A stretch of 64,000 bases of DNA from Macrostomum lignano (GCA_002269645.1 NIVC01003045.1:13703-77702); one strand, 5' to 3'; counted from the first letter of the stretch, positions 17,376-49,205 are shown. Notes: generated from the letters alone by a model not told the origin. Program-made: numbers and translations.

Positions 17376-17590
17376 GTACAGGATGGTAAAAATGGTACAG
17401 GATGAATTATAGGTTAGTACAGGATGGTAAAAACGGTACAGGATGAAATATAGGTTAGTACAGGATGGTAAAAACGGTACAGGATGAAATATAGATTAGT
17501 ACAGGATGGTAAAAATGGTACAGGATGAAATATAGGTTAGTACAGGATGGTAAAAACGGTACAGGATGAAATATATATTAGTACAGGGTG
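17376..17590. repeat. 41-bp repeat built from two GTACAGGAT subunits
   Basis: GGTACAGGATGAAATATAGGTTAGTACAGGATGGTAAAAAC x about 5. Confidence 0.9.
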
Positions 17591-17889
17591 AAATATTGAT
17601 TGATAAACGATGGAAAGGACGCTGCAATAAATGGTCAAAGAAATTTTACTTTCGTCGCCCACTTTTATATCTGCATGCCTAATTTGCTACTAGTAGTAAT
17701 ACTTGCAGATTTCTATTACTATGGAATTCGAACCTAGAAATTTCAGGCCGAATGAGGTCCTTGTCTTCTACGATATATAAGTTCAGAGAGCGTTATTTGG
17801 TAGAGTACGACTGAGTAGAGCCCGTAATCAATTGAGGACGAGTGACTTGTACAAGACTGTACGCAGAAAGCCGAGAGAGGACCAGATTT

Positions 17890-18505
17890 GTACAGGATTG
17901 TAGAGACATTAGTACAGGATTGTAGAGACATTAGTACAGGATTGTAGAGACATTAGTACAGGATTGTAGAGACATTAGTACAGGATTGTAGAGACATTAG
18001 TACAGGATTGTAGAGACATTAGTACAGGATTGTAGAGCCATTAGTACAGGATTGTAGAGACATTAGTACAGGATTGTAGAGACATTAGTACAGGATTGTA
18101 GAGACATTAGTACAGGATTGTAGAGACATTAGTACAGGATTGTAGATACATTAGTACAGGATTGTAGAGACATTAGTACAGGATTGTAGAGACATTAGTA
18201 CAGGATTGTAGAGACATTAGTACAGGATTGTAGAGACATAGGTACAGGATTTTAGAGACCTTGGTACAGGATTTTAGAGACATTGGTACAGGATTTTAGA
18301 GACATTGGTACAGGATTTTAGAGACATTGGTACACGATTTTAGAGTCATTGGTAGAGGATTTTAGAGACATTGGTACACGATTTTAGAGACATTGGTACA
18401 GGATTTTAGAGACATTGGTACACAATTGTTGACATTGATACAGGGTTTTAGAGACATTGGTATACAATTGTAGAGACATTGGTACAGGGTTGCAGAGACA
18501 TTGGT
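17890..18505. repeat. 22-bp minisatellite (GTACAGGATTGTAGAGACATTA) abutting miR-993
   Basis: About 28 units, increasingly diverged toward 18500. Confidence 0.96.
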
Positions 18506-18560
18506 ACGGCATTGCAGAGGCATTGGGGAAATATATTGCTGTTGCTGGCCATGGCAGGCA

Positions 18561-18652
18561 GGTATTCCTGTAGATACGAGCTTCTGCTTTTGAGGTGTGA
18601 AAACTGATACAGCCATTTCGAAGTCAGCAAAAGCTTGCATGTACAGGACACC
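18561..18652 (-). ncRNA. mir-993: pre-miRNA hairpin, miR-993 (miR-10 family)
   Basis: Minus-strand 3p arm 18584-18562 GAAGCTCGTATCTACAGGAATAC versus insect miR-993-3p GAAGCTCGTCTCTACAGGTATCT (seed AAGCTCG identical). 5p arm 18650-18629 TGTCCTGTACATGCAAGCTTTT resembles TACCCTGTAGTTCCGGGCTTTT. The arms pair over about 25 bp (GGTGT/ATACC, CCTGTA/TACAGG, AGCTTTTGCT/AGCAGAAGCT) with a loop of about 38 nt. Confidence 0.88.
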
Positions 18653-18786
18653 CGGACTCTGCTGTTTTCGTTCACCTGACTTTAGTTGCTTGACTTTGAG
18701 TTGCTTTCCAGTTCGAATCGCTTTTGCACCGGCCCTCTTTTAGTCTGTCTGTTTCTCTCTCTTCTGGGCAAGTTGCTTTTATGCCA

Positions 18787-18794
18787 CTTTTATA
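18787..18794 (-). promoter_or_regulatory. Candidate TATA box for pri-miR-993
   Basis: TATAAAAG on minus, with a CA initiator-like dinucleotide 29 nt downstream (18766-18765), about 110 nt 5' of the hairpin. Confidence 0.4.
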
Positions 18795-19089
18795 GCAGCC
18801 CCTTCTCCAAGAATATTTTATGGGTTCCTGCAGCCTCTTAAAACTCGACCCAGTGGGGGGTTACAAGCAACTAGCTAAAAACTCTGAAATTTTATTATAA
18901 CAAATCGTGTCCTTCGAGCATCTGATTCTACATGAAGTTTTGCCGCAATTGCAGCAGTGTATGGCGCGCTTTGACTGCTGAACACTATGGGCTGTCACCC
19001 GCGGACACCGAGAGCTAGGAGTCTGGCCAGCAGGCAATGGAGCTCTGGTTTGGCTGGAGGGCATTTTTCCACACATCTTTGGGCTCTGT

Positions 19090-19430
19090 GAAATTTCGGT
19101 TTTGTGAGATTTCGGATTTTGAGATTTCGGATTTTAAAGGTTTCGGATTTGTGAAGCTTTGAGTTTGTGAAATTTCGGTTTTGTGAGATTTCGGATTTGC
19201 GAAGTTTTGGGGTTTGTGAACTTTCGGTTTTGTGAGATTTCGGATTTGTGAGATTTCGGTTTTGTGAGATTTCGGATTTGTGAGTTTTCGGATTTGTGAA
19301 ATTTCGGTTTTGTGAGATTTCGGATCCGTAAGGTTTCGGATTTGTGAAGTTTTGGGTTTGTTAAATTTCGGTTTCGTGAAATTTCAGAGTTTGTGAAATT
19401 TCGGGTTTGTGAAATTTCGGGTTTGTGAAA
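19090..19430. repeat. 16-17-bp degenerate repeat (GTGAGATTTCGG(A/T)TTT)
   Basis: About 20 units visible. Confidence 0.92.
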
Positions 19431-19849
19431 CGACGCCCCAAGGAAAATGTCCTAAAATGTGTTTACTAAAATGTAATTTCCAGAAAAAGGCGTTTACTTA
19501 CTTACCACTCACTACTTGCCGCTGCTCCATGCGATCTCTGTCAAGCCTGTGGACTAATGGTCTGCATCATACTACAGTGCATATGAGGGTTTGTTCATGC
19601 AGCAGCTCGAACGCGACTGACAATAGAAGCATTTGAAACTCTACTAGCTATTCTATACTGTAATTTCAACCAATCAACTCTTAGCTGTAGAAGAGATTGG
19701 GGCCAGCGCGAGTTTATTGCGTTTTTTGGCATCCAGGCTGACCAAACCCACTCTTAAAGCTTGAAGTGAAAGGCAACCCGCCGTGGCTGTGAGTTTCAGT
19801 TTGTCGCTCAAAATATCAACTAGAGCGGTTTGTGTAGCTGAAACTTACT

Positions 19850-20105
19850 ACCAAATGACCAAAACTACTACCCAATGACCAAAACTATACCCAATGACTA
19901 TAACAAAACTACTATTCAATGATTAAAGCTACTACCCAATGACCAAAACTACTAACCAATGACCAAAACCTACTACCCAGCGACTAAAACTACTACCCAA
20001 TGACTAAAACTACTACCAAATTACCAAAACTACTACCAAATGACCAAAACTACTACCCAATGACCAAAACTACTACCAAATTACCAAAACTACTACCAAA
20101 CGAAC
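19850..20105. repeat. 20-bp repeat (CCAAATGACCAAAACTACTA)
   Basis: About 12 variant units. Confidence 0.92.
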
Positions 20106-20435
20106 AAAGCTCATCCCGAAACGGTGAAGCTACCACACAATGACTCAGTAATTATGTAACCCTTCAACAGTTGACCTGTAGTGCACATAACAAGGCATAA
20201 CAAGGCTTGTCAGAAATAAAATTGAGCAAAGTAAAAATATTTGAGCATTGCTGATAAATGTTTGATTCCACACCAGAGGTGAATGAAGATATACTCATGA
20301 AAGTATACTACTGTTTTGTTCTACGGTATACTATTATCATGCTGTAGAGTCAGTAGCAAGTACGGGCCATCCAAGTTCAAATTATATGATTTTTAAATAC
20401 AATATTCGTATTTGAAACATTTAGAATCTCCAACT

Positions 20436-21880
20436 CGTGATCATGTCTGTGTGAATCTAATCGGAGCGGATCATGTCTGTGTGAATCTAATCGGAGCGGA
20501 TCATGTCTATGTGAATCTAATCGGAGCGGATCATGTCTATGTGAATCTAATCGGAGCGGATCATGTCTATGTGAATCTAATCGGAGCGGATCATGTCTAT
20601 GTGAATCTAATCGGAGCGGATCATGTCTGTGTGAATCTAATCGGAGCGGATCATGTCTGTGTGAATCTAATAGGCAGCGGATAATGTCTGTGTGAATCTA
20701 ATCGGAGCGGATCATGTCTGTGTGAATCTAATCGGAGCGGATCATGTCTGTGTGAATCTAATAGGCAGCGGATAATGTCTGTGTGAATCTAATAGGGAGC
20801 GGATCATGTCTGTGTGAATCTAATCGGAGCGGATCATGTCTGTGTGAATCTAATCGGAGCGGATCATGTCTGTGTGAATCTAATAGGGAGCGGATCATGT
20901 CTGTGTGAATCTAATAGGGAGCGGATCATGTATCTGTGAATCTATAGGAGCGAATCATGTCTGTGTGAATCTAATAGGCAGCGGATAATGTCTGTGTGAA
21001 TCTAATAGGGAGCGGATCATGTCTGTGTGAATCTAATAGGGAGCGGATCATGTATGTGTGAATCTAATAGGGAGCGGATCATGTCTGTGTGAATCTAATC
21101 GGAGCGGATCATGTCTGTGTGAATCTAATCGGAGCGGATCATGTCTGTGTGAATCTAATAGGGAGCGGATCATGTCTGTGTGAATCTATAGGGAGCGGAT
21201 CATGTATCTGTGTGAATCTATAGGGAGCGGATCATGTCTGTGTGAATCTAATAGGGAGCGGATCATGTCTGTGTGAATCTAATAGGGAGCGGATCATGTC
21301 TGTGTGAATCTAATAGGGAGCGGATCATGTCTGTGTGAATCTAATAGGGAGCGGATCATGTCTGTGTGAATCTAATAGGAGCGAATCATGTCTGTGTGAA
21401 TCTAATAGGCAGCGGATAATGTCTGTGTGAATCTAATAGGGAGCGGATCATGTCTGTGTGAATCTATAGGGAGCGGATCATGTCTGTGTGAATCTAATAG
21501 GAGCGGATCATGTCTGTGTGAATCTAATAGGGAGCGGATCATGTCTGTGTGAATCTATAGGGAGCGGATCATGTCTGTGTGAATCTAATAGGGAGCGGAT
21601 CATGTCTGTGTGAATCTAATAGGGAGCGGATCATGTCTGTGTGAATCTATAGGGAGCGGATCATGTCTGTGTGAATCTAATAGGGAGCGGATCATGTCTG
21701 TGTGAATCTAATAGGGAGCGGATCATGTCTGTGTGAATCTATAGGGAGCGGATCATGTCTGTGTGAATCTATAGGGAGCGGATCATGTCTACGTGAATCT
21801 ATAGGAGCGGATCATGTCTACGTGAATCTATAGGAGCGGATCATGTCTGTGAATCTATAGGGGCGGATCATGTCTGCGTG
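20436..21880. repeat. 30-32-bp minisatellite (GGAGCGGATCATGTCTGTGTGAATCTAAT(C/AG))
   Basis: About 46 units. Confidence 0.97.
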
Positions 21881-22327
21881 AGTAAATCTCATTGCAGATC
21901 ATGGGCATGCGTGAGCGTAATTCTGCGAGCGTATTGAAGAATTGTTTTAAATTTTGTTAAACTCAAGTAAAAGATTTTACACTCGTACAACATATCTGTT
22001 GGTAATTTCTTTATAGAATCATAAGAAGATAGCCAGATTAGAAGGATCATCAAGCACTTGTTATTCGAATACATGCCGAGTCAGACTCAATCAATTAGTC
22101 ATAAGTACAGCTCGCTGGCGCACAACAGACAGATCGGGCAAAGAAATAGTTTTCCTTTGATGTCTGCCGACGCCAAGGTGCGAGGGGTGTGGGACGGAGT
22201 GCTTATGATGCTCCATATCCATCGATTGCCCTCCAGCAAAAATCGCTTTTTTAGCGTTTGGGTTGGAGTTTTGAATGCTGACTGATGATCCACAGAATGG
22301 AGGAAGCTGGTTTAGTGACTTTTGCAC

Positions 22328-23255
22328 TCGTTTTATGTAGCACATAGCATTTTACACCCGTTTTATGTAACATGTAGCATTTCACACCCGTTTTATGTAA
22401 CATGTAGCATTTCACACCCGTTTTATGTAACATGTAGCATTTCACACACGTTTTATGTAGCATGTAGCATTTTACACCCGTTTTATGTAGCATGTAGCAT
22501 TTCACACCCGTTTTATGTAGCATGTAGCATTTTACACCCGTTTTATGTAACATGTAGCATTTCACACCCGTTTTATGTAACATGTAGCATTTCACACCCG
22601 TTTTATGTAACATGTAGCATTTTACACCCGTTTTATGTAACATGTAGCATTTCACACCCGTTTTATGTAGCATGTAGCATTTCACACCCGTTTTATGTAG
22701 CATGTATCATTTTACACCCGTTTTATGTAACATGTAGCATTTCACACCCGTTTTATGTAGCATGTAGCATTTCACACCCGTTTTATGTAACATGTAGCAT
22801 TTTACACCCGTTTTATGTAACATGTATCATTTTACACCCGTTTTATGTAACATGTAGCATTTCACACCCGTTTTATGTAACATGTAGCATTTCACACCCG
22901 TTTTATGTAACATGTAGCATTTCACACCCGTTTTATGTAGCATGTATCATTTTACACCCGTTTTATGTAGCATGTAGCATTTTACACCCGTTTTATGTAG
23001 CATTTAGCATTTCACACCCGTTTTATGTACATGTAGAATTTTACACCCGTTTTATGTAACATGTAGCATTTTACACCCGTTTTATGTAACATGTAGCATT
23101 TTACACCCGTTTTATGTAGCATGTAGCATTTCACACCCGTTTTATGTAACATGTAGCATTTTACACCCGTTTTATGTAACATGTAGCATTTCACACCCGT
23201 TTTATGTAGCATGTAGCATTTCACACCCGGTTTATGTACATGTAGAATTTTACTC
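22328..23255. repeat. 30-bp minisatellite (TTTTATGTA(A/G)CATGTAGCATTT(C/T)ACACCCG)
   Basis: About 31 units. Confidence 0.97.
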
Positions 23256-23999
23256 CGATGTTGCGTAGTTTTTTAGACAAGGCTTATGCAACTTTTACGC
23301 TCGCTTTGTTAGCTTTTTAAATTTTTACATGATAATGTCGTTCTGTTTTATGTAGGCAAGCATAATTTAAGTCAGTCATTGATGGAGAAAATTTTCCCAG
23401 AAAAAAAACTTGCAAAAGACCATTCCAGGTCCTCAGTTCTCCCTTCCTAAATCCCACTCATTCGTTCGTCCCGTCTCTCTCTGCCATTCTTGATCCTAAT
23501 CTGCTGCTCTCAGATCTCTCCCTCTCTCTCTGTTGTAATTGTCCAAAACAACGTAATCCCATTCGGAATTGGGATTTCCCCACTTTCGCTCAGCAGCATA
23601 GCCAAGGACTCCTAGAACCAGTGTCTGGTGGCCTCTAATTTTAGATTGATTCAATATCAGGAAACATTTCAAACCTTAAACAATTTAAACATTTTTCAGA
23701 CAATAGGAGTCCTCATCCAATACTTGGTCTACGAGATCATTCATTGTCTGCAATTCAGCCTGAAGAGTCAACTATAATCAGTCACCAATCCACTCACACA
23801 CTCGTTAGGAAAGTACGAGTAGCTAAAGTTGATATCGTAAGAGAGTGTAGAAACACAATTGTCTATGGCAAAAACCACAAGCCAGACAGTGCACTCAAAA
23901 GCTGTGCATCTCTCCATTCAGTCATGCTCAAGAGAAATCGGAATTTTCTTTTTTTGTCTATGGCAGACCCCCGCTTGAGAAGAATCAAGTTGCTTTGGG

Positions 24000-25071
24000 C
24001 AGGGGCGTCACCATGGATTTTATGGTGGGGGGGGGGTGACAAAGCCAAGAATTCTATCTGGACATGTACATGACTAAATTCGTACATTTTCATTATTTTA
24101 AGAATTATTTCAGCTCATTTTAGCGCCGCAGGCACTCATTTTAGCGCCGCAGGCACTCATTTTAGCGCCGCAGGCACTCATTTTAGCGCCGCAGGCACTC
24201 ATTTTAGCGCCGCAGGCACTCATTTTAGCGCCGCAGGCACTCATTTTAGCGCCGCAGGCACTCATTTTAGCGCCGCAGGCACTCATTTTAGCGCCGCAGG
24301 CACTCATTTTAGCGCCGCAGGCACTCATTTTAGCACCGCAGGCACTCATTTTGGCGCCGCAGGCACTCATTTTAGCGCCGCAGGCACTCGTTTTAGCGCC
24401 GCAGGCACTCATTTTAGCGCCGCAGGCACTCATTTTGGCGCACTCATTTTAGCACCGCAGGCACTCATTTTAGCACCGCAGGCACTCATTTTAGCGCCGC
24501 AGGCACTCATTTTGGCGCACTCATTTTAGCACCGCAGGCACTCATTTTGGCGCACTCATTTTAGCACCGCAGGCACTCATTTTAGCACCGCAGGCACTCA
24601 TTTTAGCGCCGCAGGCACTCATTTTAGCGCCGCAGGCACTCATTTTGGCGCACTCATTTTAGCACCGCAGGCACTCATTTTAGCGCCGCAGGCACTCATT
24701 TTAGCGCCGCAGGCACTCATTTTAGCGCCTCAGGCACTCATTTTAGCGCCTCAGGCACTCATTTTAGCGCCTCAGGCACTCATTTTAGCGCCTCAGGCAC
24801 TCATTTTAGCGCCTCAGGCACTCATTTTAGCGCCTCAGGCACTCATTTTAGCGCCTCAGGCACTCATTTTAGCGCCTCAGGCACTCATTTTAGCGCCTCA
24901 GGCACTCATTTTGGCGGCGCAGGCGCTATATTTTGTCACCCTGAAGCAAAATTATTGATTTCCATAACGGGTCAAAGTGAGGGTGGGGGGAGCAAAGCAT
25001 GGGCATGTCCCCTCCATAGATTTTACTGGGGGGACATGTCCCCCCTGTCCCCCCTGGTGGAGACACCCCTG
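24000..25071. mobile_element. Non-autonomous TIR element (hAT-like MITE) carrying a 21-bp satellite (24112-24915)
   Basis: Ends CAGGGGCGTCACCA / TGGAGACACCCCTG are imperfect inverted repeats. Flanks GCTTTGGG (23992-23999) and GCTTTCGG (25072-25079) form a 7/8-identical 8-bp TSD. Internal array GGCACTCATTTTAGCGCCGCA x about 38. Confidence 0.75.
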
Positions 25072-25735
25072 GCTTTCGGGAATAAGCTTGCACTCCAAAT
25101 GCTGGCGCTAGCACTCCTTGACTTATCTAGCCGCCATACGGAATGGAACTGAGCGGGGGATGGTCCGACACAGAGGGGACCTACCCCTGGGGGGCTTAAA
25201 AGATTGATGGGTTAATGTTAATAATAACGCCAAATATGGGAATACGATTTTGACCTGTCGTCTTTTGAATTCGAATTCTTATAAAATAGTTGAAGCAGTC
25301 TTGGTTTCGAAACTCAAGTCTCAAGGGTCCTGTCTGTCGGTCGGTTGTGGGGTTTTACTTGAGCGGAGTATGAGAAATATGGTTAATGGGAGTGGCGTGT
25401 GTATATATGTAGGAATCTTCAAGGCGACTGAACACGAGGTGAATCCCTGTGAGACAATTGCTATCGTTTTTAAAAATCAATGGCCCTATTTACCTGACTG
25501 ATCTTCTCCCAAAAATAAGGCTGGAAGGAAATGGCAACGGTTGGCGGAGGCATAGCAACCCAACTTCCGCATGGAGGCGCTGGCCAAGCATTGGAGAGCG
25601 GCGTGTCATTAATTATCATTAGCGATTTTGAAAAATGCGACCCTAAGTCGAACGAGAGTGCGCAGGCCTGCTAGATAACCTGGTATATCTGGTTTTGGAA
25701 TTTTGCTGCCTTCAAAGGATATAGGAGTACTTTTA

Positions 25736-25970
25736 GATCCAACTGAGGAACAGGGATTTAGGTACACTGATCCCACTGAGGAACGGGGATTTAGGTACAC
25801 TGATCCAACTGAGGAACGGGGATTTAGGTACACTGATCCCACTGAGGAACGGGGATTTAGGTACACTGATCCCACTGAGGAACGGGGATTTAGGTACACT
25901 GATCCCACTGAGGAACGGGGATTTAGGTACACTGATCCAACTGAGGAACAGGAATTAAGGTACACTGATC
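25736..25970. repeat. 33-bp repeat (GATCC(A/C)ACTGAGGAACGGGGATTTAGGTACACT) x7
   Basis: Directly visible. Confidence 0.95.
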
Positions 25971-27036
25971 CGGCTGTGAAAGAGGGACAGTAACGGAAGC
26001 ATACAATATGAAATTCGTGGTTAATGCATTAATTAGATAAAAATATAATGTTTGCAGCCAGTTTCTAACAAATATCTTATTAGTCGCTGCATTTTTGTTC
26101 AAATGCATATCATGTAATATGCTCATCATATCATATCATGTACTCGTACTTTGGCATTGGCTACCGTCCAGACAGATTTTTCTGTCTGCTTTCTTGGCTC
26201 GTTAATAATAAAAAGAATAAATGAAAGATAGGTAAGGTAGTGAGAGAGAGATTTGTTCTCAAACGCATATCTGCAGAGGCCAGAAATTTGTGGGTAATAT
26301 TATTCTGCTTACATTGCTATTTAGTGCCATTATAATGTGCTATTCAAGCACTCCAGTCGAGAGAGAGAGAGAGTTAAGTTGCTATACTGACTTTTGCGCC
26401 CTCAAGTGCAGCTCTCCTCAAACCCTCCGGCGGTTCAGGGTCCTCTCGGAGCTTTGATGCTTGCCGCCGGCACTGTTTCCAGACTGCCTGCTAGCTGCCG
26501 TTTCTCTGGCCCGGGGACTTCTGAAAACAGAGGTCCTTGGACGGGCGTAGTTTCCAAATTTCGGGTCTGCTAGTAGTCCATGGCTTAGGCGGCGCCTTCG
26601 TCTGCCTTTCTCTTTCTGCATAGAATGGTGTGGAATCGAGATGGTCGGCCCGGAGTCAAAGGCTCTCCCCCTCTCTCTCTGGGCTCCTGCGCCACCTGCG
26701 GCAGCAGCTAGCAGCAAAAAAAAACTTAGAAAAAATCCAGTCAAAAAAAGAAACCAAACCCCTCTCATTGCGCACTAGAAATGTTATAAGCCATAGCGCC
26801 TACAGTGGGCGGTACACGCAATTGTAGCGGGTTCTCTGCCTGAAACAGAAGCCATAAATTTGCCGCCTGTCTCAGGCTCTGCCACCCCCACCCCCTCCCT
26901 CAGAACCCATTCGGCCGAAACTCTATCTTGGCTATATTGAACAATTAGTTTATGGAGTTAATAATATTCTAACTAAATAAACAGGTATATAGCTGCTAGC
27001 TATTCTGACCGTACTAAATGTCTGCCATGACCTAGT

Positions 27037-27795
27037 GTCAGAGTGAGATGCTGGCGCCACAACCACATTAGTGTCAGCTGCTGGCGCCACAACCACCATA
27101 TTGTCAGCAGCTGGCGCCACAATCACATTGTGTCAGCAGCTGGCGCCACAATCACATTGTGTCAGCAGCTGGCGCCACAATCACATTAGTGTCAGCTGCT
27201 GGCGTCACAACCACCCTAGTGTCAGCTGCTGGCGCCACAACCATCTTAGTACCAGCTGCTGGCGTCACAACCATTCTAGTGTCAGCTGCTGGCGCCACAA
27301 CCATCTTAGTACCAGCTGCTGGCGCCACAACCACCATATTGTCAGCTGCTGGCGCCACAACCACCATATTGTCAGCAGCTGGCGCCACAATCACATTGTG
27401 TCAGCAGCTGACGTCACAACCACCATATTGTCAGCAGCTGGCGCCACAATCACATTAGTGTCAGCTGCTGGCGCCACAACCACCCTAGTGTCAGCTGCTG
27501 GCGCCACAATCACATTAGTGTCAGCTGCTGGCGCCACAACCACCCTAGTGTCAGCTGCTGGCGCCACAACGATCTTAGTATCAGCTGCTGGCGCCACAAT
27601 CACATTAGTGTCAGCAGCTGACGTCACAACCACCATATTGTCAGCAGCTGGCGCCACAATCACATTAGTGTCAGCTGCTGGCGCCACAACCACCCTAGTG
27701 TCAGCTGCTGGCGCCACAATCACATTAGTGTCAGCTGCTGGCGCCAAAACCACCCTAGTGTCAGCTGCTGGCGCCACAACCACCCTAGTGTCAGC
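27037..27795. repeat. 30/33-bp minisatellite (GTCAGC(T/A)GCTGGCGCCACAA...) just upstream of Hox3
   Basis: About 24 variant units. Confidence 0.95.
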
Positions 27796-28075
27796 TGTTG
27801 TCACGGCGGCCGTAATAGTCAGGGCACTCCTAGTTTCAGGTAGAGTAGATCGAAACTGTCCAATTGATAATGAGTTTACTATCAATAATTGGGAAAAACT
27901 CCAATTCGGAATGATTATTCCCCAGCCCCCTCCCCCCGGTACACCTCGCCGCCTCATCTCTTCGCCTATTCGCCAGCGTTTAGGCGAGAGAATCCAGGAG
28001 GAGGAGAGCCGCCCCCCTCCCCAGGCCCGGCCGCCCCGGACCAACCGGCCGTTTTCAAGCCGGGTCGCGTGCGAA

Positions 28076-28080
<5 letters not shown>

Positions 28081-28126
<46 letters not shown>

Positions 28127-28132
28127 TCTCTC
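28081..28132. repeat. (TC)n tract 90 bp upstream of the Hox3 ATG
   Basis: Directly visible. Confidence 0.95.
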
Positions 28133-28220
28133 TAATATAACTGCCAGATTTGATTCGATTTTTAAAGCCGCCCCGCTGCAACAACTATCTATTCCATATA
28201 TCAGACAGATATTAAACCCG

Positions 28221-28488
28221 ATGACTGGGGTGCAGCGCAACTCGCAGCAGCACAGAGCAGGGATGCATCAGCAGCATCAGCAGATGCTGCATGGCGGTCT
28301 ACCACATCCAATCTATCCCTGGATGATGGAGACTCGAGGCCACAGCGCTGGCGGAGCAGGAGGCGGCGGCGGTGGCGGTGGCCATAGCCGATCCGCTTCA
28401 AGGACAGCTCAGTCGGGACGTCAGTCTGCAGTGGACGGCGTCGGCTTTGACATGGAATCGGCGACCGAGTTTAGCAAAGGAGATGCTG
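28221..28488 (+). CDS. Hox3: Hox3-like gene, coding exon 1 (hexapeptide exon)
   Basis: ORF MTGVQ...LPHPIYPWMMETRG...SKGDA contains the Hox hexapeptide YPWM. It ends at a perfect donor GCTG|GTAAGT (intron from 28489, phase 1). An in-frame TAA lies at 28077-28079. AG acceptors at 28204/28208 leave open an additional upstream exon. Confidence 0.85.
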
Positions 28489-28529
28489 GTAAGTGAAGAC
28501 TTTGAAGCTGCGGAGAGATGGGCGAGAGA

Positions 28530-29925
28530 GAGAGAAATGCAGGGAGATAACAGAGAAGGGAGATAAGGGAGATAAGAGAGAAATGTAGGGAGATAACAGA
28601 AACGCAGGGAGGTAAGAGAGAAATTGCAGGGAGATATGCGAGAGCGAGAGAGAAATGCAGGGAGATGTGCGAAAGAGAGAGAGGAATGCAGGGAGATGCG
28701 CGAGAGAGAGAGGAATGCAGGGAGATGCGCGCGAGAGAGAGGAATGCAGGGAGATGCGCGCGAGAGAGAGAGGAATGTAGGGAGATGTGCGAGAGAGAGA
28801 AATGCAGGGAGATGTGCAAGAGAGAGAAATGCAGGGAGATGTGCGAGAGAGAGAAATGCGGGGAGATGTAGGGAGATAAGAGAGAAACGCAGGGAGATAA
28901 GAGAGAAATGTAGAGAGATAAGCGAGAAACGCAGGGAGATAAGAGAGAAACGCAGGGAGATAAGAGAGAAACGCAGGGAGATAAGAGAGCAACGCAGGGA
29001 GATAAGAGAGAAGCGCAGGGAGATAAGAGAGAAGCGCAGGGATATAAGAGAGAAGCGCAGGGAGATAAGAGAGAAGCGCAGGGAGATAAGAGAGAAACGC
29101 AGGGAGATAAGAGAGCAACGCAGGGAGATAAGAGAGAAACGCAGGAAGATAAGAAAGAAACGCAGGGAGATAAGAGAGCAACGCAGGGAGATAAGAGAGC
29201 AACGCAGGGAGATAAGAGAGAAACGCAGGGAGATAAGAGAGAAACGCAGGGAGATAAGAGAGAAACGCAGGGAGATAAGAGAGAAACGCAGGGAGATAAG
29301 AGAGCAACGCAGGGAGATAAGAGAGCAACGCAGGGAGATAAGAGAGAAACGCAGGGAGATAAGAGAGAAACGCAGGGAGATAAGAGAGCAACGCAGGGAG
29401 ATAAGAGAGCAACGCAGGGAGATAAGAGAGCAACGCAGGGAGATAAGAGAGCAACGCAGGGAGATAAGAGAGAAGCGCAGGGAGATAAGAGAGCAACGCA
29501 GGGAGATAAGAGAGAAGCGCAGGGAGATAAGAGAGAAACGCAGGGAGATAAGAGAGCAACGCAGGGAGATAAGAGAGAAACGCAGGGAGATAAGAGAGAA
29601 ACGCAGGGAGATAAGAGAGCAACGCAGGGAGATAAGAGAGCAACGCAGGGAGATAAGAGAGAAAGGGAGATAAGAGAGAAGCGCAGGGAGATAAGAGAGC
29701 AACGCAGGGAGATAAGAGAGAAGCGCAGGGAGATAAGAGAGAAACGCAGGGAGATAAGAGAGAAACGCAGGGAGATAAGAGAGCAACGCAGGGAGATAAG
29801 AGAGCAACGCAGGGAGATAAGAAAGAAACGCAGGGAGATAAGAGAGCAACGCAGGGAGATAAGAAAGAAACGCAGGGAGATAAGAGAGCAACACAGGGAG
29901 ATAAGAGAGAAACGCAGGAAGAAAG
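28530..29925. repeat. 21-bp purine-rich minisatellite (GCAGGGAGATAAGAGAG(A/C)AAC) in Hox3 intron 1
   Basis: About 50 regular units plus a degenerate 5' part. Confidence 0.97.
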
Positions 29926-31451
29926 AATTCGGAGTCAGAGAAAGAAACGCGGGCAGATCCGGAGAGAGATAAACGCAGTGAAAGGGCATGAACTGACTGT
30001 GTGTGAACAGAGACAGCAAGCCCCTTTGCTATAATATTTTAACTCCACGCGCGTATCAAAGTCGCAAATGGATGCTCTTCAGGCTGAGAATCGAGCCCAG
30101 TCAGTCCCGATGCCTGCGCAGCATTCAAGCAAGGGGGTGTCAGTGCGGTCCATATTTACAGCGGCCAACTGTGGCACCGAAGAGGGCACTGGGAGATTTA
30201 CATCCCCGAACTTCTGGCACTAATAAATTTTCACTGCCTCGAATTCCCAAGTGTTACGACGGGTTGCTGGGATGTACTCCAATCTTCCGACGAAATGTGC
30301 TATTGATTTTTAAGTGGCACTTGGCAAACAATAGAGCCCAAGTCATTAATTAATACGAGCGTAATTACTGATTATGATAGGCGTCACAGAAATCACAATA
30401 GTTTTGGCTAATATCTGAGATTTCTCCGCGTGCCTCATATGCTATGCCATCGGGAGTTGATTGGGGCGGAAGGTTTAGCGGATGGTGGATCATTTGTCAA
30501 ATATGAGCCCTCACGCCAGATTGAAGATGAAGAGAGAGAGAGAGATGGGGAGAGAAGTCTGGAGGCTGGGGGGGGGTATCGGCCCTCTCTCGTGACAAGA
30601 CCCCGGGAGCTGCCCGCGGTGCATCGAAGCAGAGGGGGCGGGGGCGGAAGGGCGGGGCCAGGTTGCCGTGATGGCAAGCGGCGGCTTTGAAGCGAGCCGC
30701 CACTGCTGGCTGTGGGGGAGTTCAGGAACGGCAAAAACTCCCGTGAGCTGCACCTCTGCGCCAGAGCCACGTGAGCAGCAGGCCCTGCGAGGGAGCTCAC
30801 CGCGGGGCACCGGGCAGAGGAGGAGGATCAGGAGAAAGTCAATTAATCTTAGCCGGCCGGTGCACTGGGGGAGGGTCCGGGCGGAGGAGGCAGGGATGGA
30901 GGGCGGGGAACTGATGATGAATGACGGCCGAAGCTTCGCTTTTGTCTGTCTGCGGCCGCGGCGGCAGGAGCAAAGCAGACGAGGAAAATGGGAAGGAAGA
31001 GGCTGTGAGGCTGGGTTGGCGGGGGGGGGTATAATTTCTGTTTTGCATATTTTTCATGATGCCGAATCTACAGAAGAAGAATGGCCGCCACCTCCCCCCC
31101 CCTCATCGGAGCCGAGAATTCGCGAACGAGGAGGAGAGCTCGCGGCTCTCGAGCTCCGCCTCGGATGGCCAGGCGGGCCTGACAGAGGCGGCTCAGCGGC
31201 CGACTGGGTGGAGATTGATGATTCTGCTTCCGTATTCTGCAGCGGCTGCCAGGCAAAGAATTCTCAGCCGCTGCCCCCCTTCCCCCAGGGGGACTTCAGA
31301 ATCAGCACTGCTAATTCTACCTTTGGTTTCCCACCTGCTCAGCTTGGGCCGCAGGAAATGTATAAAATGAAGCTGATGATGGGGTGCTTGCTTTGTTTAG
31401 TTGGCCACTGACTTGCTGACCAACTCGTTTAGTTGGTGCTCTCTGATTCAA

Positions 31452-31911
31452 CAAAGTGGCGCCTCTGAGGGCTCAAAGTGGCATTCCCGACTGACACAAA
31501 GTGGCACCTCTGAGGGTTCAAAGTGGCAATTCCCGACTGACACAAAGTGGCACCTCTGAGGGCTCAAAGTGGCAATTCCCGACTGACACAAAGTGGCACC
31601 TCTGAGGGTTCAAAGTGGCAATTCCCGACTGACACAAAGTGGCACCTCTGAGGGTTCAAAGTGGCAATTCCCGACTGACACAAAGTGGCACCTCTGAGGG
31701 CTCAAAGTGGCAATTCCCGACTGACACAAAGTGGCACCTCCAAGGGCTCAAAGTGGCATTCCCGACTGACACAAAGTGGCACCTCCAAGGGCTCAAAGTG
31801 GCATTCCCGACTGACACAAAGTGGCACCTCTGAGGGCTCAAAGTGGCATTCCCGACTGACCAAAGTGGCACCTCTAAGGGCTCAAAGTGGCAATTCCCGA
31901 CTGACACAAAG
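31452..31911. repeat. 45/46-bp dimeric minisatellite in Hox3 intron 1
   Basis: CAAAGTGGCACCTCTGAGGGCT + CAAAGTGGCAATTCCCGACTGACA x10. Confidence 0.95.
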
Positions 31912-33843
31912 ACTCTTGTGCTGATAAATTGTGCCGCAACAAATATCTGAATATTTCAATCTCATTATTAGCATTGGATCAGGGGAATCTGTACGCACAT
32001 AAAGTTGGTCTGCCTCCCCATAAATACCATATTGCATTTATCAGTTGGTAGCAAGGCTGCTTATACCAACCGCAATAAATTCAAGATTCTCTCGCTTAAA
32101 ACGATAATTATAGTTCAGCGCGGCATCGACAGCGCCAACAGCCTCGGCAACAAACTGGAAAAATGGGGGGGCTGCTCCATCTTCTCCGGGAACGAGAGGC
32201 TGGATGGCTGCAGCCGAATCAGGTCTGGGGGTCATAAATAACTCAGAGAGGAGAGGGGGCGGCAGCGGCGCACCTTGCCAGAGCCTTCATCTTGGCCAGC
32301 TAAGGGAAAAGTCTTGCCGCGCTTTGCCTTGACTGCATGGCAAATTGTTGTGAAGTCAAGCAAAATTTATTAACCTTCATGGATTCTGGCTGCGGGTTGA
32401 TGTAGCTTACGCTCGTAGTTTCCTGGCAACTATTAGAATAGTTTAACTGTCCCACAACTAGTAAGGATAATTGGATAAAAATTTTAATAAATTAAAATCA
32501 CTTATTTTATTGATTAGATTTTTTGTTTTTCAGTCTAATTTAAGTATGTCATTCTATCGCAACACCCCAGATGTTTTTTTTCAGATTGGAAATGCAAAAT
32601 TGCATATCAACAAACAAAAACCAAAGTTCCCTGACCTTCAAGATAACTTCTTTTGATGCAAAAATATGAAAGCGATTTAAATCTGGCTTCAGAATCCTGG
32701 AATTTTAGAATTGCTTTTAATTTAAAAAACAACCCGCGGCCCCCTCTACCGTTACAAAATCGAAATTCAAGCGTCCATGCCACTTCGAACTGCGGGTTGC
32801 CATGCGGCCAATACGGAAAAGATTAAGGCGGAGGAAATGATTGATGCCGGTGTCAAACTTGATTGCAGTCGCTACCTCCCCTCCCCTCCGACCTCACGGG
32901 GTTTGAAGTCGAGTTTTGCTTCCGCAGTAGTCAGCCGTGCGCATCGCTGCTGCTGCTGTACACTACGTGTGCGATTGTGCAGTCCGATAGCCACCACAAG
33001 ATAATACACAGCTAACTTACTATCAGGGGCAAAGTTTTAAAGAGGCCACGCAAACAGCTGCTGTGCTTAATTTTCCAACTGATATTTTCCTGTCAAATGT
33101 GCGGATTGGAGGAGAGGCGGAAAGGAGATTAGGGAACCTATAGAATGAGAGGGTAATTGTAACCCAGGAAGCATCCACTATGCATGCAGGCGGAGGCACT
33201 TTGCGACACCACAGCTCCACTTCAAACTGTCGATTGTTTGTAGCTTATGGACACCTCGCTACACTGCAGTTGCTTGGCTGATTGGCCCTAGCTAGAAGCA
33301 GCGAGAGACGGCTTAGATACTGAAGTCATGAAAAGTTTCTTGCGCCAGACTATACTCACAATTAGTTTTGTGGCTCGAGTACGAAAATCGGGCTTGGGCC
33401 ATCCAAGGCACAGAGTGTACATATGCCTGACGGTCAGACAGTCAGGCCCCGCTGAACACCTTTTGCGAGTGTGTGCTTGTGTACGTATCTAATTCCTCTC
33501 GTGAGCTGACTAACTAACACCTACTGAAGCTGAAAATGAAGCTCGGCTGCTTAGGTCCATGGCCAATTAAAAAAAAACATATTATATACTTTGTGCATCA
33601 TCTGTCATGTGCAACCCAGAGGCATTGCCTGTTGTTCTGTTGCCTGTTGTTGAAAGATCAGAAAAAAGCGATTGGCTGAAGCCATAAGTCACAGGCTGAC
33701 GTAGGCATCAAACGGGGTTAAAATTTCAAATGTTTCATCTCTGGGGGAAGTCATCTTTGCCTTTGCGTCACCTTTGCTTTCGCCTCTGGGTGAGTATTCG
33801 CATCGCATTAACTACCAACGCCTTCAATCCGAACATTTCACAG

Positions 33844-34117
33844 ACTCGGCCATCGGCTCGGCATCGAAGCGGATTCGCACGGCCTACACAAACGCGCAGC
33901 TGGTCGAGCTTGAGAAGGAGTTCCACTTCAACCGCTACCTGTGCCGGCCAAGACGCATCGAACTGGCCAATTCGTTGAGTCTCAGCGAGCGCCAGATCAA
34001 GATCTGGTTTCAGAACCGGCGCATGAAGTACAAGAAGGACCAGAAACTGGTCAGGGAGCAGGACATGCGGCTGCGGCACCTCAGACAGGCCGACGGGCCG
34101 CCCCATCTTATTAAAGA
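33844..34117 (+). CDS. Hox3: Hox3-like gene, coding exon 2 (homeobox, 33864-34043)
   Basis: [61 protein letters not shown] carries PG3-diagnostic TAY, LCRPRR and MKYKKDQ, and differs from the HOXA3 homeodomain as I recall it at about 7/60 positions. Acceptor TTTCACAG|AC is phase 1 and matches exon 1 (G+AC=Asp); branch-like TTAAC about 30 nt upstream; donor GA|GTAAGT at 34118 (phase 2). Confidence 0.95.
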
Positions 34118-34433
34118 GTAAGTACGGAATTAAATGACCGTTTCAGCTACTAACAGTAGCGGATGCGTAAGTAATGCCATTAATCGATGAATTATTATTA
34201 ATAGACTGGTAGAAATTGCATTAAACTACGAGTACATTAACAAGTTGTATGATATTTATACCTAGCTTTATGCAAAAAACTGGATCCAGCTATAAAAGTG
34301 CTAAAGCTGTCATTAAGCAGCCAATTTTTTAAATATGCACATATGCTGTAGGACCTGAAGCAAAGTTAAACAGGACAAGCCACGTCAATCAAAGAAATCC
34401 AAAGAAAAGTTCAATTTGCCGTCTCCTCTGCAG

Positions 34434-34730
34434 AGAGAAGTACATGCACATCGCTGGAATGATACCGATTGCTTATCCGGGCTGCGAGCAGCAGCAGCAG
34501 CAGCAGCAGCATCTTCAACAGCAGCAGCAGCAGCATCAGCAGCATCTTCAACAGCAGCCGGAATTGACCGAGTGCGGCAGTCCCGAAGCTGGGGCCACTG
34601 ACTATCAGCCGATTCTGTGCCCAACTCAGCAGCACGACTTGATGGCGCCTCAGCAGCAGCATGCTAGGCAGCAGTTCTTCCCTCTGCACCTGCAGGAGTC
34701 TCGAGACGGCAAGCAGTCAGCCGGTTACTT

Positions 34731-34774
<44 letters not shown>

Positions 34775-34809
34775 CAGGTCAGCAGCAGTTCCGACTTCCT
34801 TTTGTTTAA
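34434..34809 (+). CDS. Hox3: Hox3-like gene, coding exon 3 (polyglutamine C-terminal tail)
   Basis: Acceptor GTCTCCTCTGCAG|A is phase 2 and matches exon 2 (GA+A=Glu), reading EEKYMHIAG...QQQQ...RLPFV-stop in frame with track ORF 34444-34809. Confidence 0.75.
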
Positions 34810-40610: not shown

Positions 40611-40639
40611 GATGATGATTTACATGTATGTAATCGCCC

Positions 40640-40694
<55 letters not shown>

Positions 40695-41199
40695 ACCGTC
40701 TTCTCATGGGGGAAGGATCAGATCGTATGACTATATGGATGGCTGCCAGCCGTCTATGACCAGACTATGACCGACAGATCGCCCTTCAGGTTGTCCCGCC
40801 CATGCATATTGATAACTTTTTGGTAGTGCTATATTTAGAGATGGGGTAAGGACCCAAATGTGCCCCATCGATAGCTATAAGGTGCAAATATTGATCATCG
40901 GGTTATTGCATGACCCACTGGCTGCGGCCGGAGCCCCGCCTGGGATGGGTATCAAAGGGTTGGAGCTTAATTAGCGGCGAGCAGCATGCAGCCGAATAGC
41001 TAATAGGAATCTGCTTGGGCACAAATCGAGAACTCCGGGATCATACAGACGGATTTTTATAAGGGGATCTTTTAAGGCTGTGATGACATACGGTTCAGAT
41101 TGCAAAAAGTACATGTAGTGTATAGAGAACACGTAGAACAGCTATACGTGTACATCTAGTTTGGATTGATCAATGGGTTCGGGCCTGGCTCCTCATATG

Positions 41200-41460
41200 A
41201 AAGGTAATTTCCTCTCCACATGGAGCACCAGACCGCTGATGTGATGAACCACTGCTGGCAGCGTGCGTCTGCGTCGTGGCATGTCAGGTCCGCTGATACG
41301 TCAGCAGACACAGTCAGCATCTCGGTCTTCAATATGCTGTCAACGCTTGAACCCACCTCTTTCTGTGCTTTCAACAGACGAGAAAAAGAGGCTGAGGTCG
41401 CCAGCGTTGCCAAACAAGCTCAGGTGTTTTTTGCCGCTGTGGCGAACGATGCGTCTCCAC
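41200..41460 (-). pseudogene. Short, older RTE reverse-transcriptase relic (duplicate at about 49711-49971)
   Basis: RLLKAQKEVGSSVDSILKTEMLTVSADVSADLTCHDADARCQ aligns by eye with the post-YADD region of the neighbouring RTE copies. Confidence 0.55.

Positions 41461-49148: not shown

Positions 49149-49205
<57 letters not shown>

What the first reader, a model, noticed from the sequence alone, without database searches (positions are those of the whole stretch)
18561..34809. Unannotated miR-993 hairpin 9.6 kb 5' of Hox3: a surviving piece of ancestral Hox-cluster synteny
Seen: a well-paired minus-strand hairpin whose 3p arm keeps the miR-993 seed (GAAGCTCG) and a long loop of about 38 nt, hidden between two minisatellites and invisible to the ORF track. 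Established: miR-993 lies between Hox3/zen and Hox4/Dfd in protostome Hox clusters. Inference: the miR-993-Hox3 linkage has been kept even though about 5 kb of new tandem arrays sit between them. If this is a flatworm, whose Hox genes are generally described as dispersed, this is direct evidence of a cluster remnant and predicts a Hox4-like gene to the left of the window. The 5p arm is strongly diverged (TGTCCTGTAC versus TACCCTGTAG), suggesting 3p-only function.
Basis: partly seen in the sequence, partly recalled or inferred. Interest (0 to 1): 0.8.

Follow-up and report, generated by a model that had tools for sequence, protein, structure and literature searches.

The report
Flatworm miR-993 hairpin beside Hox3
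A well-formed microRNA hairpin of the Hox-cluster family miR-993 (Mir-10-P4) lies 9.6 kb upstream of, and antisense to, the only Hox gene (Hox3) in this Macrostomum flatworm window; arthropods have the same arrangement, so one small piece of the ancestral Hox neighbourhood survives in an animal said to have no Hox cluster.

Summary
Window 18561-18652 (minus strand) folds into a strong hairpin (-34.3 kcal/mol, z = -5.2). Its 3' arm, GAAGCUCGUAUCUACAGG, matches arthropod miR-993-3p at 17 of 18 bases with the seed intact; no such match is expected by chance. A covariance model built only from 15 published arthropod mir-993 precursors finds this one site in 64 kb (26.9 bits, E about 3e-5; antisense reading 16.8 bits). 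The 5' arm aligns in register (16/22), and 15 of 16 family consensus pairs are kept.

The neighbour is an intact two-exon Hox3 gene on the plus strand and holds the only homeobox in the window. A retroelement ORF is 90-97% identical to many Macrostomum lignano proteins, so the window is from a Macrostomum flatworm.

The hairpin sits on the Hox4 side of Hox3 and on the opposite strand. Where strand can be read, Strigamia, Ixodes, Bemisia and a mite-like contig show the same antisense orientation, so position and orientation both fit inherited synteny.

Three things are not shown: expression, conservation in sister species, and a Hox4 gene to the left (none within 18.5 kb). This is a new member of a known kind and moderately interesting. 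No paper in the searchable library reports miR-993 in flatworms.

The parts
18554..18662 (-). Predicted pri-miRNA stem-loop of the miR-993 (Mir-10-P4) orthologue. It has a basal stem of about 10 bp with two small 5'-side bulges, an upper stem of about 25 bp with three single mismatches or bulges, and a 37-nt terminal loop.
   Evidence: Folds at -42.2 kcal/mol, z = -4.62. The 92-nt core gives -34.3 kcal/mol, z = -5.19. The arthropod-only covariance model R1 hits 18564-18647(-) at 26.9 bits, E = 2.9e-5, the only significant hit in 64 kb.
18562..18584 (-). Predicted mature 3p product GAAGCUCGUAUCUACAGGAAUAC (seed AAGCUCG).
   Evidence: 17/18 identical to arthropod miR-993-3p with 0 chance matches expected; 19/23 over the full length, by eye against the sequence. 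All 16 comparison hairpins share CAGAAGCUCG. The 3p arm is the mature arm of Mir-10-P4 in annelids (PMC12257675). The exact ends are predicted, not observed.
18628..18650 (-). Predicted 5p (star) product UGUCCUGUACAUGCAAGCUUUUG, placed by the 2-nt overhang rule.
   Evidence: Aligns in register with the canonical 5p arm ACCCUGUAGAUCCGGGCUUUUG at 16/22 identity. It ends in the same GCUUUUG. Its seed differs from the canonical one at two positions.
18589..18625 (-). Terminal loop of 37 nt with a small internal 5-bp helix.
   Evidence: Long loops have precedent: Drosophila and Anopheles mir-993 precursors have inserts of similar size (alignment in PMC4862073 supplement 5), and long precursors are described as typical of flatworms (PMC6468455).
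18787..18794 (-). TATAAAAG, 125 nt upstream of the stem base on the hairpin's strand. It is a possible core promoter element for an independent pri-miRNA transcript (inference only).
Evidence: Five copies in the window against 3.6 expected.
17886..18524 (.). 22-bp minisatellite (29 copies) ending 30 bp from the 3' base of the stem-loop (18554); flanks the miRNA.
   Evidence: TRF result; sequence read.
19087..28133 (.). Spacer between the miRNA and Hox3. It holds eight tandem arrays (19087-19430, 19841-20108, 20439-21881, 22325-23250, 24114-24924, 25736-25971, 27049-27797, 28081-28133) totalling 4,830 bp.
   Evidence: No Pfam-supported gene was found among the ORFs tested here.
28221..28488 (+). 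Hox3 exon 1. The ATG is at 28221, the hexapeptide YPWM at 28314-28325, and the donor G|GTAAGT follows 28488 (phase 1).
28489..33843 (+). Hox3 intron (GT...AG, 5,355 nt), largely filled by tandem arrays (28524-29926, 31451-31911).
33844..34121 (+). Hox3 exon 2. The homeobox is at 33867-34046 and the stop codon at 34119-34121. The spliced product is 181 aa.
   Evidence: Pfam Homeodomain E = 1.5e-23. tblastn finds this as the only homeobox in the window. Named database hits are overwhelmingly Hox3/zen class, with 85-90% identity to vertebrate Hox-B3/D3 over the homeodomain. The spliced translation is open.

Best explanation
The hairpin is the Macrostomum orthologue of the protostome Hox-cluster microRNA miR-993 (MirGeneDB name Mir-10-P4). 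It is still in its ancestral place: on the Hox4 side of Hox3 and transcribed antisense to the Hox gene.

Proposed mechanism (inferred):
- A minus-strand primary transcript is made, possibly from its own promoter within about 150 nt upstream.
- It folds into a stem of about 35 bp.
- Drosha/Pasha cuts about one helical turn above the basal junction.
- Dicer removes the 37-nt loop.
- The 3' arm, GAAGCUCGUAUCUACAGGAAUAC, is loaded into Argonaute. Its seed AAGCUCG is identical to that of arthropod and annelid miR-993, so it should recognise the same kind of target sites.
- The 5' arm, whose seed has changed, acts as the passenger strand.

What is shown: the hairpin, its family membership by sequence and structure, its position and orientation relative to an intact Hox3, and the flatworm origin.

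What is inferred: transcription, the processing sites, arm choice, and that the linkage is inherited rather than re-created.
For: Hairpin strength:
- z = -5.19 for the core and -4.62 with the basal stem.

Sequence and family membership:
- The 3p arm is 17/18 identical to arthropod miR-993-3p, with 0.00 chance matches expected (reference sequences from PMC12484754 and PMC4862073 supplement 5).
- Model R1, built from 15 published arthropod mir-993 precursors without the window, gives one significant hit in 64 kb, at this site on the minus strand: 26.9 bits, E = 2.9e-5. The plus-strand reading scores 16.8 bits.
- In an alignment with 16 bona fide hairpins both arms align in register and the window keeps 15 of 16 consensus pairs.
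- The single substitution in 3p positions 1-18 (C10 to A) also occurs in Metaseiulus mir-993. In the window it pairs with U14 of the 5' arm, closing what is an internal loop in the canonical hairpins.
- The locus is single-copy, not part of a repeat.

Neighbour gene and organism:
- Hox3 is intact and carries the only homeobox in the window.
- The organism is Macrostomum.

Position and orientation:
[quoted passage not shown] It is placed in the lophotrochozoan ancestral Hox complex (PMC3290615) and in the annelid cluster (PMC12257675).
- In the mite-like contig L008 the miR-993 hairpin is on the strand opposite a pb-type homeobox 5.4 kb away.
Against: - There are no expression data, so processing and arm choice are predictions.
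- Rfam gives no hit for the site, either at gathering thresholds or at E up to 10 in a 601-bp search. Rfam has no mir-993 family, however. Its mir-10 model scores four genuine miR-993 hairpins at 29-52 bits, and only one of them reaches the 47.5-bit gathering cut-off.
- The model score (26.9 bits) is far below that of canonical hairpins (61-82 bits). This reflects the diverged 5' arm, the long loop and unmatched flanks.
- Both strands fold equally well.
- No second Hox gene is in the window, so 'cluster' context is not demonstrated.
- Conservation in a sister species or in the paralogous Macrostomum Hox3 locus could not be examined.
Confidence: 0.75

Rival explanations
1. It is a decaying relic. 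The locus descends from miR-993 and still sits next to Hox3, but it is no longer transcribed or correctly processed. The conserved 3' arm would then reflect only recent loss of function.
For: - The 5' arm seed has changed, and two stem positions that pair in the canonical hairpins are mismatches here (A.C and C.C).
- The loop is long and the model score low.
- The locus is hemmed in by minisatellites.
- No flatworm miR-993 is reported in the searchable literature, and flatworms are known for losing conserved miRNAs (PMC3840308).
Against: - 17/18 identity of the 3' arm with arthropods implies purifying selection over most or all of the lineage's history.
- The stem is strong and continuous with a proper basal extension.
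- Two substitutions tighten the stem rather than degrade it.
- Long loops are normal for Drosophila mir-993 and for flatworm precursors.
Confidence: 0.15
2. The functional reading is the plus strand, or both strands as in mir-iab-4/iab-8. A hairpin transcribed in the same direction as Hox3 would yield a miR-10-like 5' product, UAUUCCUGUAGAUACGAGCUUCUG.
For: - The plus strand folds just as well (-33.8 kcal/mol, z = -5.19).
- It gives a weak hit to the mir-993 model (16.8 bits, E = 0.02).
- Bidirectional Hox miRNA loci exist (mir-iab-4/8, PMC7210998).
Against: - The plus-strand seed (AUUCCUG) matches neither miR-10 nor miR-993.
- The Rfam mir-10 model finds nothing on either strand.
- The minus strand scores 10 bits higher and carries the exact miR-993-3p seed.
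- Antisense orientation is the norm for mir-993.
Confidence: 0.05
3. It is a chance or satellite-derived hairpin. An inverted arrangement of minisatellite-like sequence (the neighbouring arrays share a TCCTGTAC core with the 5' arm) would happen to resemble miR-993.
For: - The 22-bp and 41-bp arrays to the left contain ATCCTGTAC, and the 5' arm contains GTCCTGTAC.
- The pattern scan also picked up an unrelated 41-bp satellite (L047) whose unit resembles miR-993-3p. Satellites can therefore mimic the motif.
Against: - The seed half GAAGCTCGT is absent from the flanking satellites.
- The 18-mer match has zero chance expectation, and the whole-precursor model gives E about 3e-5.
- The hairpin is unique sequence.
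- Its position and orientation next to Hox3 are exactly those expected for miR-993.
Confidence: 0.03

Closest known systems
Arthropod mir-993 (e.g. Drosophila MI0005854, Tribolium MI0010588, Ixodes MI0012289, Metaseiulus mir-993)
   Same: - The 3p arm GAAGCUCGU.UCUACAGG and its seed.
- A 5p arm homologous to miR-10-5p, with the same stem register.
- Location on the Dfd side of Hox3, on the strand opposite mir-10 where strand can be read.
- A long terminal loop, as in Drosophila and Anopheles.
- A at 3p position 10, as in Metaseiulus.
   Different: - The 5p arm has 6 of 22 substitutions, two of them in the seed region.
- The canonical internal loop is closed into pairs, and two new single mismatches appear.
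- The flanks do not match the arthropod basal stem.
- Tandem arrays surround the locus.
- No Hox4 gene is visible nearby.
Annelid and mollusc Mir-10-P4 (Platynereis, Capitella, Lottia)
   Same: Lophotrochozoan members of the same gene, located in the Hox cluster. The 3p arm is the mature product (PMC12257675; PMC3290615 Fig. S4 legend).
   Different: I could not obtain their sequences or coordinates with the tools available, so no direct comparison was made. Those species keep organised or split Hox clusters, whereas Macrostomum is reported to lack one (bioRxiv 10.1101/058669).
mir-10 (Mir-10-P1; Rfam RF00104)
   Same: The parent family. The hairpin architecture is the same and the 5p arms are related (CCUGUA...).
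   Different: - mir-10 lies between Hox4 and Hox5, in the same orientation as the Hox genes.
- It uses an ACCCUGU 5p seed.
- The window hairpin does not score against RF00104 and carries the miR-993-specific 3p arm.
[quoted passage not shown]
   Same: A Hox-complex miRNA locus where strand matters. One product is antisense to the Hox genes, and the hairpin folds on both strands.
   Different: The sequence is unrelated, the locus lies in the posterior part of the cluster, and it is arthropod-specific.

Membership tests
miR-993 / Mir-10-P4 | 3p arm with the miR-993 seed (AAGCUCG) and the conserved 3p body | tested here: met
   GAAGCTCGTATCTACAGG at 18567-18584(-) is 17/18 identical to the arthropod sequence, with 0 chance matches expected. 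The CAGAAGCTCG columns are invariant in the 17-sequence alignment.
miR-993 / Mir-10-P4 | Whole-precursor similarity (sequence plus structure) to known family members | tested here: met
   Covariance model R1, built from 15 published arthropod precursors, scores 26.9 bits with E = 2.9e-5 (rough calibration). This is the only significant hit in 64 kb. 15 of 16 consensus pairs are kept.
miR-993 / Mir-10-P4 | 5p arm homologous to the miR-10-type 5p arm (ACCCUGUAGAUCCGGGCUUUUG) | tested here: inconclusive
   It aligns in register at 16/22 and ends in the same GCUUUUG, but two seed-region positions differ. Intermediate forms exist in metagenomic hairpins L003, L015 and L044.
miR-993 / Mir-10-P4 | Pri-miRNA geometry: about 35 bp of stem including a basal stem of about 11 bp, with arms offset by 2 nt | tested here: met
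   This is a predicted fold only. The upper stem is about 25 bp, and the basal stem about 10 bp with two bulges (18554-18662, -42.2 kcal/mol, z = -4.62).
miR-993 / Mir-10-P4 | Genomic position between Hox3 and Hox4/Dfd | tested here: inconclusive
   The Hox3 half is met: the hairpin is 9.6 kb 5' of Hox3, on the expected side. The Hox4 half cannot be seen: there is no homeobox in the 18.5 kb to the left.
miR-993 / Mir-10-P4 | Orientation antisense to the Hox genes and mir-10. This is an empirical regularity read from published coordinates, not a formal criterion. | tested here: met
   In the window the hairpin is on the minus strand and Hox3 on the plus strand. The same holds in Strigamia, Ixodes, Bemisia and the mite-like contig L008.
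miR-993 / Mir-10-P4 | Expression criteria for a bona fide miRNA: reads from both arms, uniform 5' ends, 2-nt 3' overhangs | not testable with these tools
Rfam mir-10 (RF00104) | Score at or above the family gathering threshold (47.5 bits) | tested here: not met
   No hit at gathering thresholds or at E up to 10. Of four genuine miR-993 hairpins tested, three also fail the threshold (42.2, 37 and 29.1 bits) and one passes (51.8 bits).
Hox3 (paralogue group 3) | PG3-type homeodomain plus an upstream hexapeptide, in an intact reading frame | tested here: met
   Pfam Homeodomain E = 1.5e-23. YPWM is at 28314. The best named hits are Hox3/zen class at 85-90% over the homeodomain, against 71-77% to Dfd, pb, lab and Scr queries that I wrote from memory. 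The spliced ORF of 181 aa is open.
Hox cluster | Two or more Hox genes linked in collinear order | tested here: not met
   There is only one homeobox in 64 kb. The window may simply be too small to show a second one.

The most novel reading that the evidence does not exclude
The miR-993-Hox3 pair is an indivisible regulatory unit. The antisense miRNA transcript and the Hox gene downstream of it would share cis-regulatory DNA (divergent transcription). Selection would then keep them together even when the rest of the Hox cluster is atomised. This would explain why the pairing survives in a flatworm despite about 5 kb of inserted satellites. It would also explain why mites that lost Hox3 keep the miRNA attached, in the same antisense orientation, to the next anterior gene, pb. 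A weaker side reading is that the flanking satellites are amplified debris of extra Mir-10-family hairpins.
Probability: 0.15. Interest if true: 0.6.

Novelty: new member of a known kind. Interest (0 to 1): 0.38.

Why it matters
Flatworm Hox genes are the textbook case of a dispersed ('atomised') Hox complement. Macrostomum lignano is cited as lacking a Hox cluster, and flatworm chromosomes are scored as scrambled in macrosynteny analyses.

A Hox-cluster microRNA that still sits on the correct side of Hox3 and in the ancestral orientation is a concrete piece of ancestral microsynteny in this phylum. It would extend Mir-10-P4 to Platyhelminthes. It gives an anchor for asking, in chromosome-scale Macrostomum assemblies, whether Hox4 lies further left. 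It also offers a testable case for whether miRNA-Hox linkage is kept by shared regulation.

The find is incremental rather than surprising, because miR-993 is an old protostome gene whose presence in an early-branching free-living flatworm is what one would expect.

Tried and rejected
- **Rfam scans:** no hit for the window at gathering thresholds or for the locus at E up to 10. Rfam has no mir-993 family, and its mir-10 model misses three of four genuine miR-993 hairpins at its threshold.
- **Macrostomum paralogue locus:** the look-up of the contig encoding the closest M. lignano Hox3-like protein (P0001) returned nothing on record. The paralogous or orthologous locus could not be inspected.
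- **Metagenome pattern scan:** GAAGCTCGTNTCTACAGG returned 51 loci. About half are bacterial chance matches. About 25 are genuine miR-993 hairpins, including termite-, Daphnia- and mite-like ones. None is recognisably a flatworm orthologue, and only L008 carries a homeobox.
- **L001:** a diverged miR-993-like hairpin scoring 22.8 bits on one strand and 21.1 on the other. It lies next to a Dicer gene, not a Hox gene, and gives no help on synteny.
- **L047:** the match lies in a 41-bp satellite, probably a chance pick-up.
- **Flanking minisatellites as miR-10-family derivatives:** nominal p is about 0.01 and 0.026. This is not significant after about 28 tests, so it is kept only as a note.
- **Seed-site scan:** miR-993-3p sites occur at background frequency. 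One site lies inside the Hox3 homeobox and one 5p-type site in the putative 3'UTR. These are too few to interpret.
- **TATA-like box upstream:** suggestive by position only.
- **Folding energy as a strand discriminator:** rejected, because both strands fold equally well.
- **Mesobuthus coordinates as orientation evidence:** rejected, because that table lists iab-4 and iab-8 with identical coordinates.
- **Literature:** no paper in the library reports miR-993 in flatworms or a MirGeneDB annotation of Macrostomum.

Full report
**Observation.** The minus strand of 18561-18652 reads GGUGUCCUGUACAUGCAAGCUUUUGCUG...CAGAAGCUCGUAUCUACAGGAAUACC. It folds into one long hairpin (-34.3 kcal/mol; shuffles average -18.2; z = -5.19; 0 of 200 shuffles fold as well). 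Adding the flanks extends the stem by about 10 bp, with two small bulges on the 5' side. The resulting 109-nt stem-loop spans 18554-18662 (-42.2 kcal/mol, z = -4.62). The terminal loop is 37 nt and holds a small 5-bp helix. The hairpin is unique sequence within the window. It lies between a 22-bp minisatellite (17886-18524) and a 16-bp one (19087-19430).

**Is it miR-993?** I took reference sequences from papers rather than from memory. One is a Bemisia precursor with 3p gaagctcgtctctacaggtatct (PMC12484754). The others are 15 arthropod mir-993 precursors from the supplementary alignment of PMC4862073.
- The 18-mer GAAGCTCGTCTCTACAGG has a single match in the window at up to 2 mismatches, at 18567-18584(-) with one mismatch. 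Chance expectation is 0.00. Over 23 nt the identity is 19/23.
- I built a covariance model from the 15 published arthropod precursors alone (alignment A2, model R1). Searching the whole window gave one significant hit, 18564-18647(-), at 26.9 bits and E = 2.9e-5 (rough calibration). The same locus read on the plus strand scores 16.8 bits, and nothing else is below E = 0.2.
- In an alignment with 16 genuine hairpins both arms fall in register. The 5' arm is GUCCUGUACAUGCAAGCUUUUG against the canonical ACCCUGUAGAUCCGGGCUUUUG (16/22). Three metagenomic hairpins (L003, L015, L044) have intermediate 5' arms.
- The window keeps 15 of the 16 RNAalifold consensus pairs. The one broken pair is an A.C.
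- The single change in 3p positions 1-18 (C10 to A) is shared with Metaseiulus mir-993. In the window it pairs with a U of the 5' arm, so the canonical internal loop is closed.
- Rfam gives no hit. Rfam has no mir-993 family, however. Its mir-10 model scores four genuine miR-993 hairpins at 51.8, 42.2, 37 and 29.1 bits against a 47.5-bit threshold. The Rfam negative therefore mainly reflects the long loop and the diverged 5' arm.

**Processing geometry (inferred).** If the 3p product starts at G at 18584, as in all relatives, a 23-mer ends at 18562. The 2-nt overhang rule then places the 5p product at 18650-18628, ending in GCUUUUG like the canonical 5p arm. About 10 bp of basal stem lie below these ends, which is the usual Drosha measuring distance (general knowledge). 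A 37-nt loop is unusual for miRNAs in general. It is not unusual for this gene, since Drosophila and Anopheles mir-993 carry comparable inserts. Nor is it unusual for this phylum, since long precursors are reported as characteristic of flatworms (PMC6468455).

**Strand.** Folding does not decide the strand: the plus strand gives -33.8 kcal/mol and the same z-score. The strand call rests on three things: the 10-bit difference in model score, the exact miR-993-3p seed on the minus strand, and the orientation seen in other animals (below).

**The neighbour gene.** The plus strand carries a two-exon Hox gene.
- Exon 1 is 28221-28488, with YPWM at 28314 and the donor G|GTAAGT.
- The intron is phase 1 and 5,355 nt long.
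- Exon 2 is 33844-34121, preceded by the acceptor tttcacag|AC. The homeobox is at 33867-34046 and a stop follows ...LIKE.
- The spliced frame is open and encodes 181 aa.
- Pfam Homeodomain scores E = 1.5e-23.
- Named database hits are overwhelmingly Hox3/zen class, with 85-90% identity to vertebrate Hox-B3/D3 over the homeodomain. Identity to Dfd, pb, lab and Scr homeodomain queries that I wrote from memory is 71-77%.
- It is the only homeobox in the window by motif search and by tblastn with eight Hox homeodomains.

**Organism.** The best hit of the Hox3 protein is a Macrostomum lignano homeobox protein (A0A1I8FWG9). Identity is 77% over the homeodomain and C-terminal tail, including the terminal LIKE motif. 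A retroelement ORF at 59086-60867(-) has dozens of M. lignano hits at 85-97% identity, while other sources reach at most 55%. The window therefore comes from Macrostomum, either M. lignano or a very close relative. The UniProt Hox3-like protein is then a paralogue, or the orthologue in a sister species. I could not decide which.

[quoted passage not shown] It is drawn in the inferred lophotrochozoan ancestral Hox complex (PMC3290615, Fig. S4 legend). It is part of the annelid cluster, where the 3p arm is the mature product (PMC12257675).

In the window Hox3 is on the plus strand, so the Hox4 side is to the left, and that is where the hairpin lies. The hairpin is antisense to Hox3. Published coordinates show that this is the normal state:
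- In Strigamia the mir-993 BLAST hits run forward and the mir-10 hits run in reverse on the same scaffold.
- In Ixodes mir-993 is listed in reverse and mir-10 forward on the same scaffold.
- In Bemisia mir-10 is on the plus strand and the miR-993-type hairpin on the minus strand, 148 kb apart.
- In the metagenomic contig L008 the hairpin is nearly identical to Tetranychus mir-993b and scores 82 bits. It is on the strand opposite a pb-type homeobox 5.4 kb away (the pb assignment is from the sequence signature as I know it).

Position and orientation thus both agree with inheritance from the ancestral cluster. The 9,568-bp spacer contains eight tandem arrays totalling 4,830 bp. That these arrays are recent is plausible but untested.

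**What is known, and novelty.** Macrostomum and Schmidtea are cited as lacking a Hox cluster (bioRxiv 10.1101/058669; PMC4815179). Flatworm genomes are scored as scrambled for ancestral linkage groups (PMC12257675). No paper in the searchable library links miR-993 to flatworms or records a curated Macrostomum miRNA set. I could not consult MirGeneDB or miRBase directly, so prior annotation there cannot be excluded. The finding is a new member of a known kind: a known protostome Hox-cluster miRNA, found in a phylum and a genomic setting where it had apparently not been described.

**Most likely mechanism.**
- A minus-strand primary transcript is made. A TATAAAAG at 18787-18794(-), 125 nt upstream of the stem, is a possible core promoter, but this is only a positional hint.
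- The transcript is cropped by Drosha and diced.
- GAAGCUCGUAUCUACAGGAAUAC is loaded as the guide strand. Its seed is unchanged from arthropods and annelids.
- The altered 5p seed, together with 3p use in annelids, makes 3p dominance likely. Arm usage of mir-993 does switch among arthropods (PMC2956262; PMC3141673), so this remains an inference.

**Rival explanations.**
- A non-functional relic (about 0.15) cannot be excluded without reads. The near-perfect 3p arm and the tight stem argue against long-standing decay.
- A plus-strand or bidirectional product (about 0.05) has no homology support.
- A chance or satellite-derived hairpin (about 0.03) is contradicted by the statistics and by the unique sequence.

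**Limits.** Four things are not shown: expression, conservation in sister species, targets, and the presence of Hox4 further left. 'Cluster remnant' should be read as 'a two-member microsynteny consistent with the ancestral cluster'.

Noticed in passing
window 17376-17601, 17886-18524 and 19087-19430: On the hairpin's strand, the minisatellites flanking it carry miR-10-family-like motifs. Copies of the 22-bp unit nearest the hairpin read ACCCTGTACCAATGTCTCTACA, which combines ACCCTGTA (the canonical 5p seed region) and GTCTCTACA (canonical miR-993-3p nt 8-16). The 16-bp unit AATCCGAAATTTCACA contains ATCCGAAATTT, as in Bemisia miR-10-5p. Nominal shuffle p is about 0.01 and 0.026, which is not significant after multiple testing. 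This could be chance, or amplified debris of Mir-10-family hairpins.
   Followed up: partly
window 40000-45200 and 48509-53700: A near-identical (99-100%) direct segmental duplication with an offset of about 8.51 kb. Each copy contains six copies of a 197-bp satellite (41482-42766 and 49993-51277).
   Followed up: partly
window 55984-56805(-), 59086-60867(-), 37058-38220(+): Transposable-element remains lie downstream of Hox3. They include a mariner/DDE-type transposase fragment and a retroelement ORF with an RNase H domain that is 90-97% identical to many Macrostomum lignano proteins. Overlapping ORFs around 37-38 kb have no Pfam hit. No Hox1 or Hox2 gene lies in the 30 kb to the right of Hox3.
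   Followed up: partly
window 33905 (+) and 34370 (+): A 7-mer complementary to the miR-993-3p seed (CGAGCTT) lies inside the Hox3 homeobox, in the codons for V-E-L of LVELEKEF. A site for the predicted 5p seed (ACAGGAC) lies about 250 nt after the Hox3 stop codon. Site counts over the whole window are at background level.
   Followed up: partly
window 28524-29926, 31451-31911, 34444-34809: The Hox3 intron is largely made of tandem arrays: AG-rich 21-31-bp units over about 1.4 kb and a 46-bp unit in 10 copies. A CAG/polyQ-rich ORF lies just downstream of the Hox3 stop in a different frame. It may be 3'UTR, an alternative exon, or noise.
   Followed up: no
P0001 (UniProt A0A1I8FWG9, Macrostomum lignano): The closest database protein contains the same Hox3-type homeodomain twice in 192 aa. 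This suggests a gene model that merges two tandem or allelic copies. It is 77% identical to the window protein, so Macrostomum probably has at least two Hox3-type loci. No contig is on record for it.
   Followed up: partly
L001 2357-2456 (+), with genes at 4173-7312 (+): A diverged miR-993-like hairpin sits in an unidentified eukaryotic contig (JAALOO010000351.1). Its 3p arm is exact, its 5p arm reads AGCUUGUACAUUCGAGCU, and it scores 22.8 bits. It lies 1.7 kb upstream of a Dicer gene (Dicer_dimer, PAZ and two RNase III domains). The same project also has a canonical miR-993 hairpin (L026, 61 bits).
   Followed up: partly
L047 1950-3200: A 41-bp satellite of about 30 copies, on a contig from the same sample series as the termite-like miR-993 hits. 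Its unit GTCAGCAGCTTGTATCTACAGGGCTAT... resembles miR-993-3p, and one copy matches the search pattern exactly. There is no hairpin partner, so it is probably a chance pick-up of the pattern scan.
   Followed up: yes
L008 560-900 (-) and 6063-6148 (+): A rhizosphere metagenome contig carries a hairpin almost identical to Tetranychus mir-993b, 5.4 kb from a pb-type homeobox on the opposite strand. This looks like an acariform mite showing the published 'mir-993 next to pb after Hox3 loss' arrangement.
   Followed up: partly
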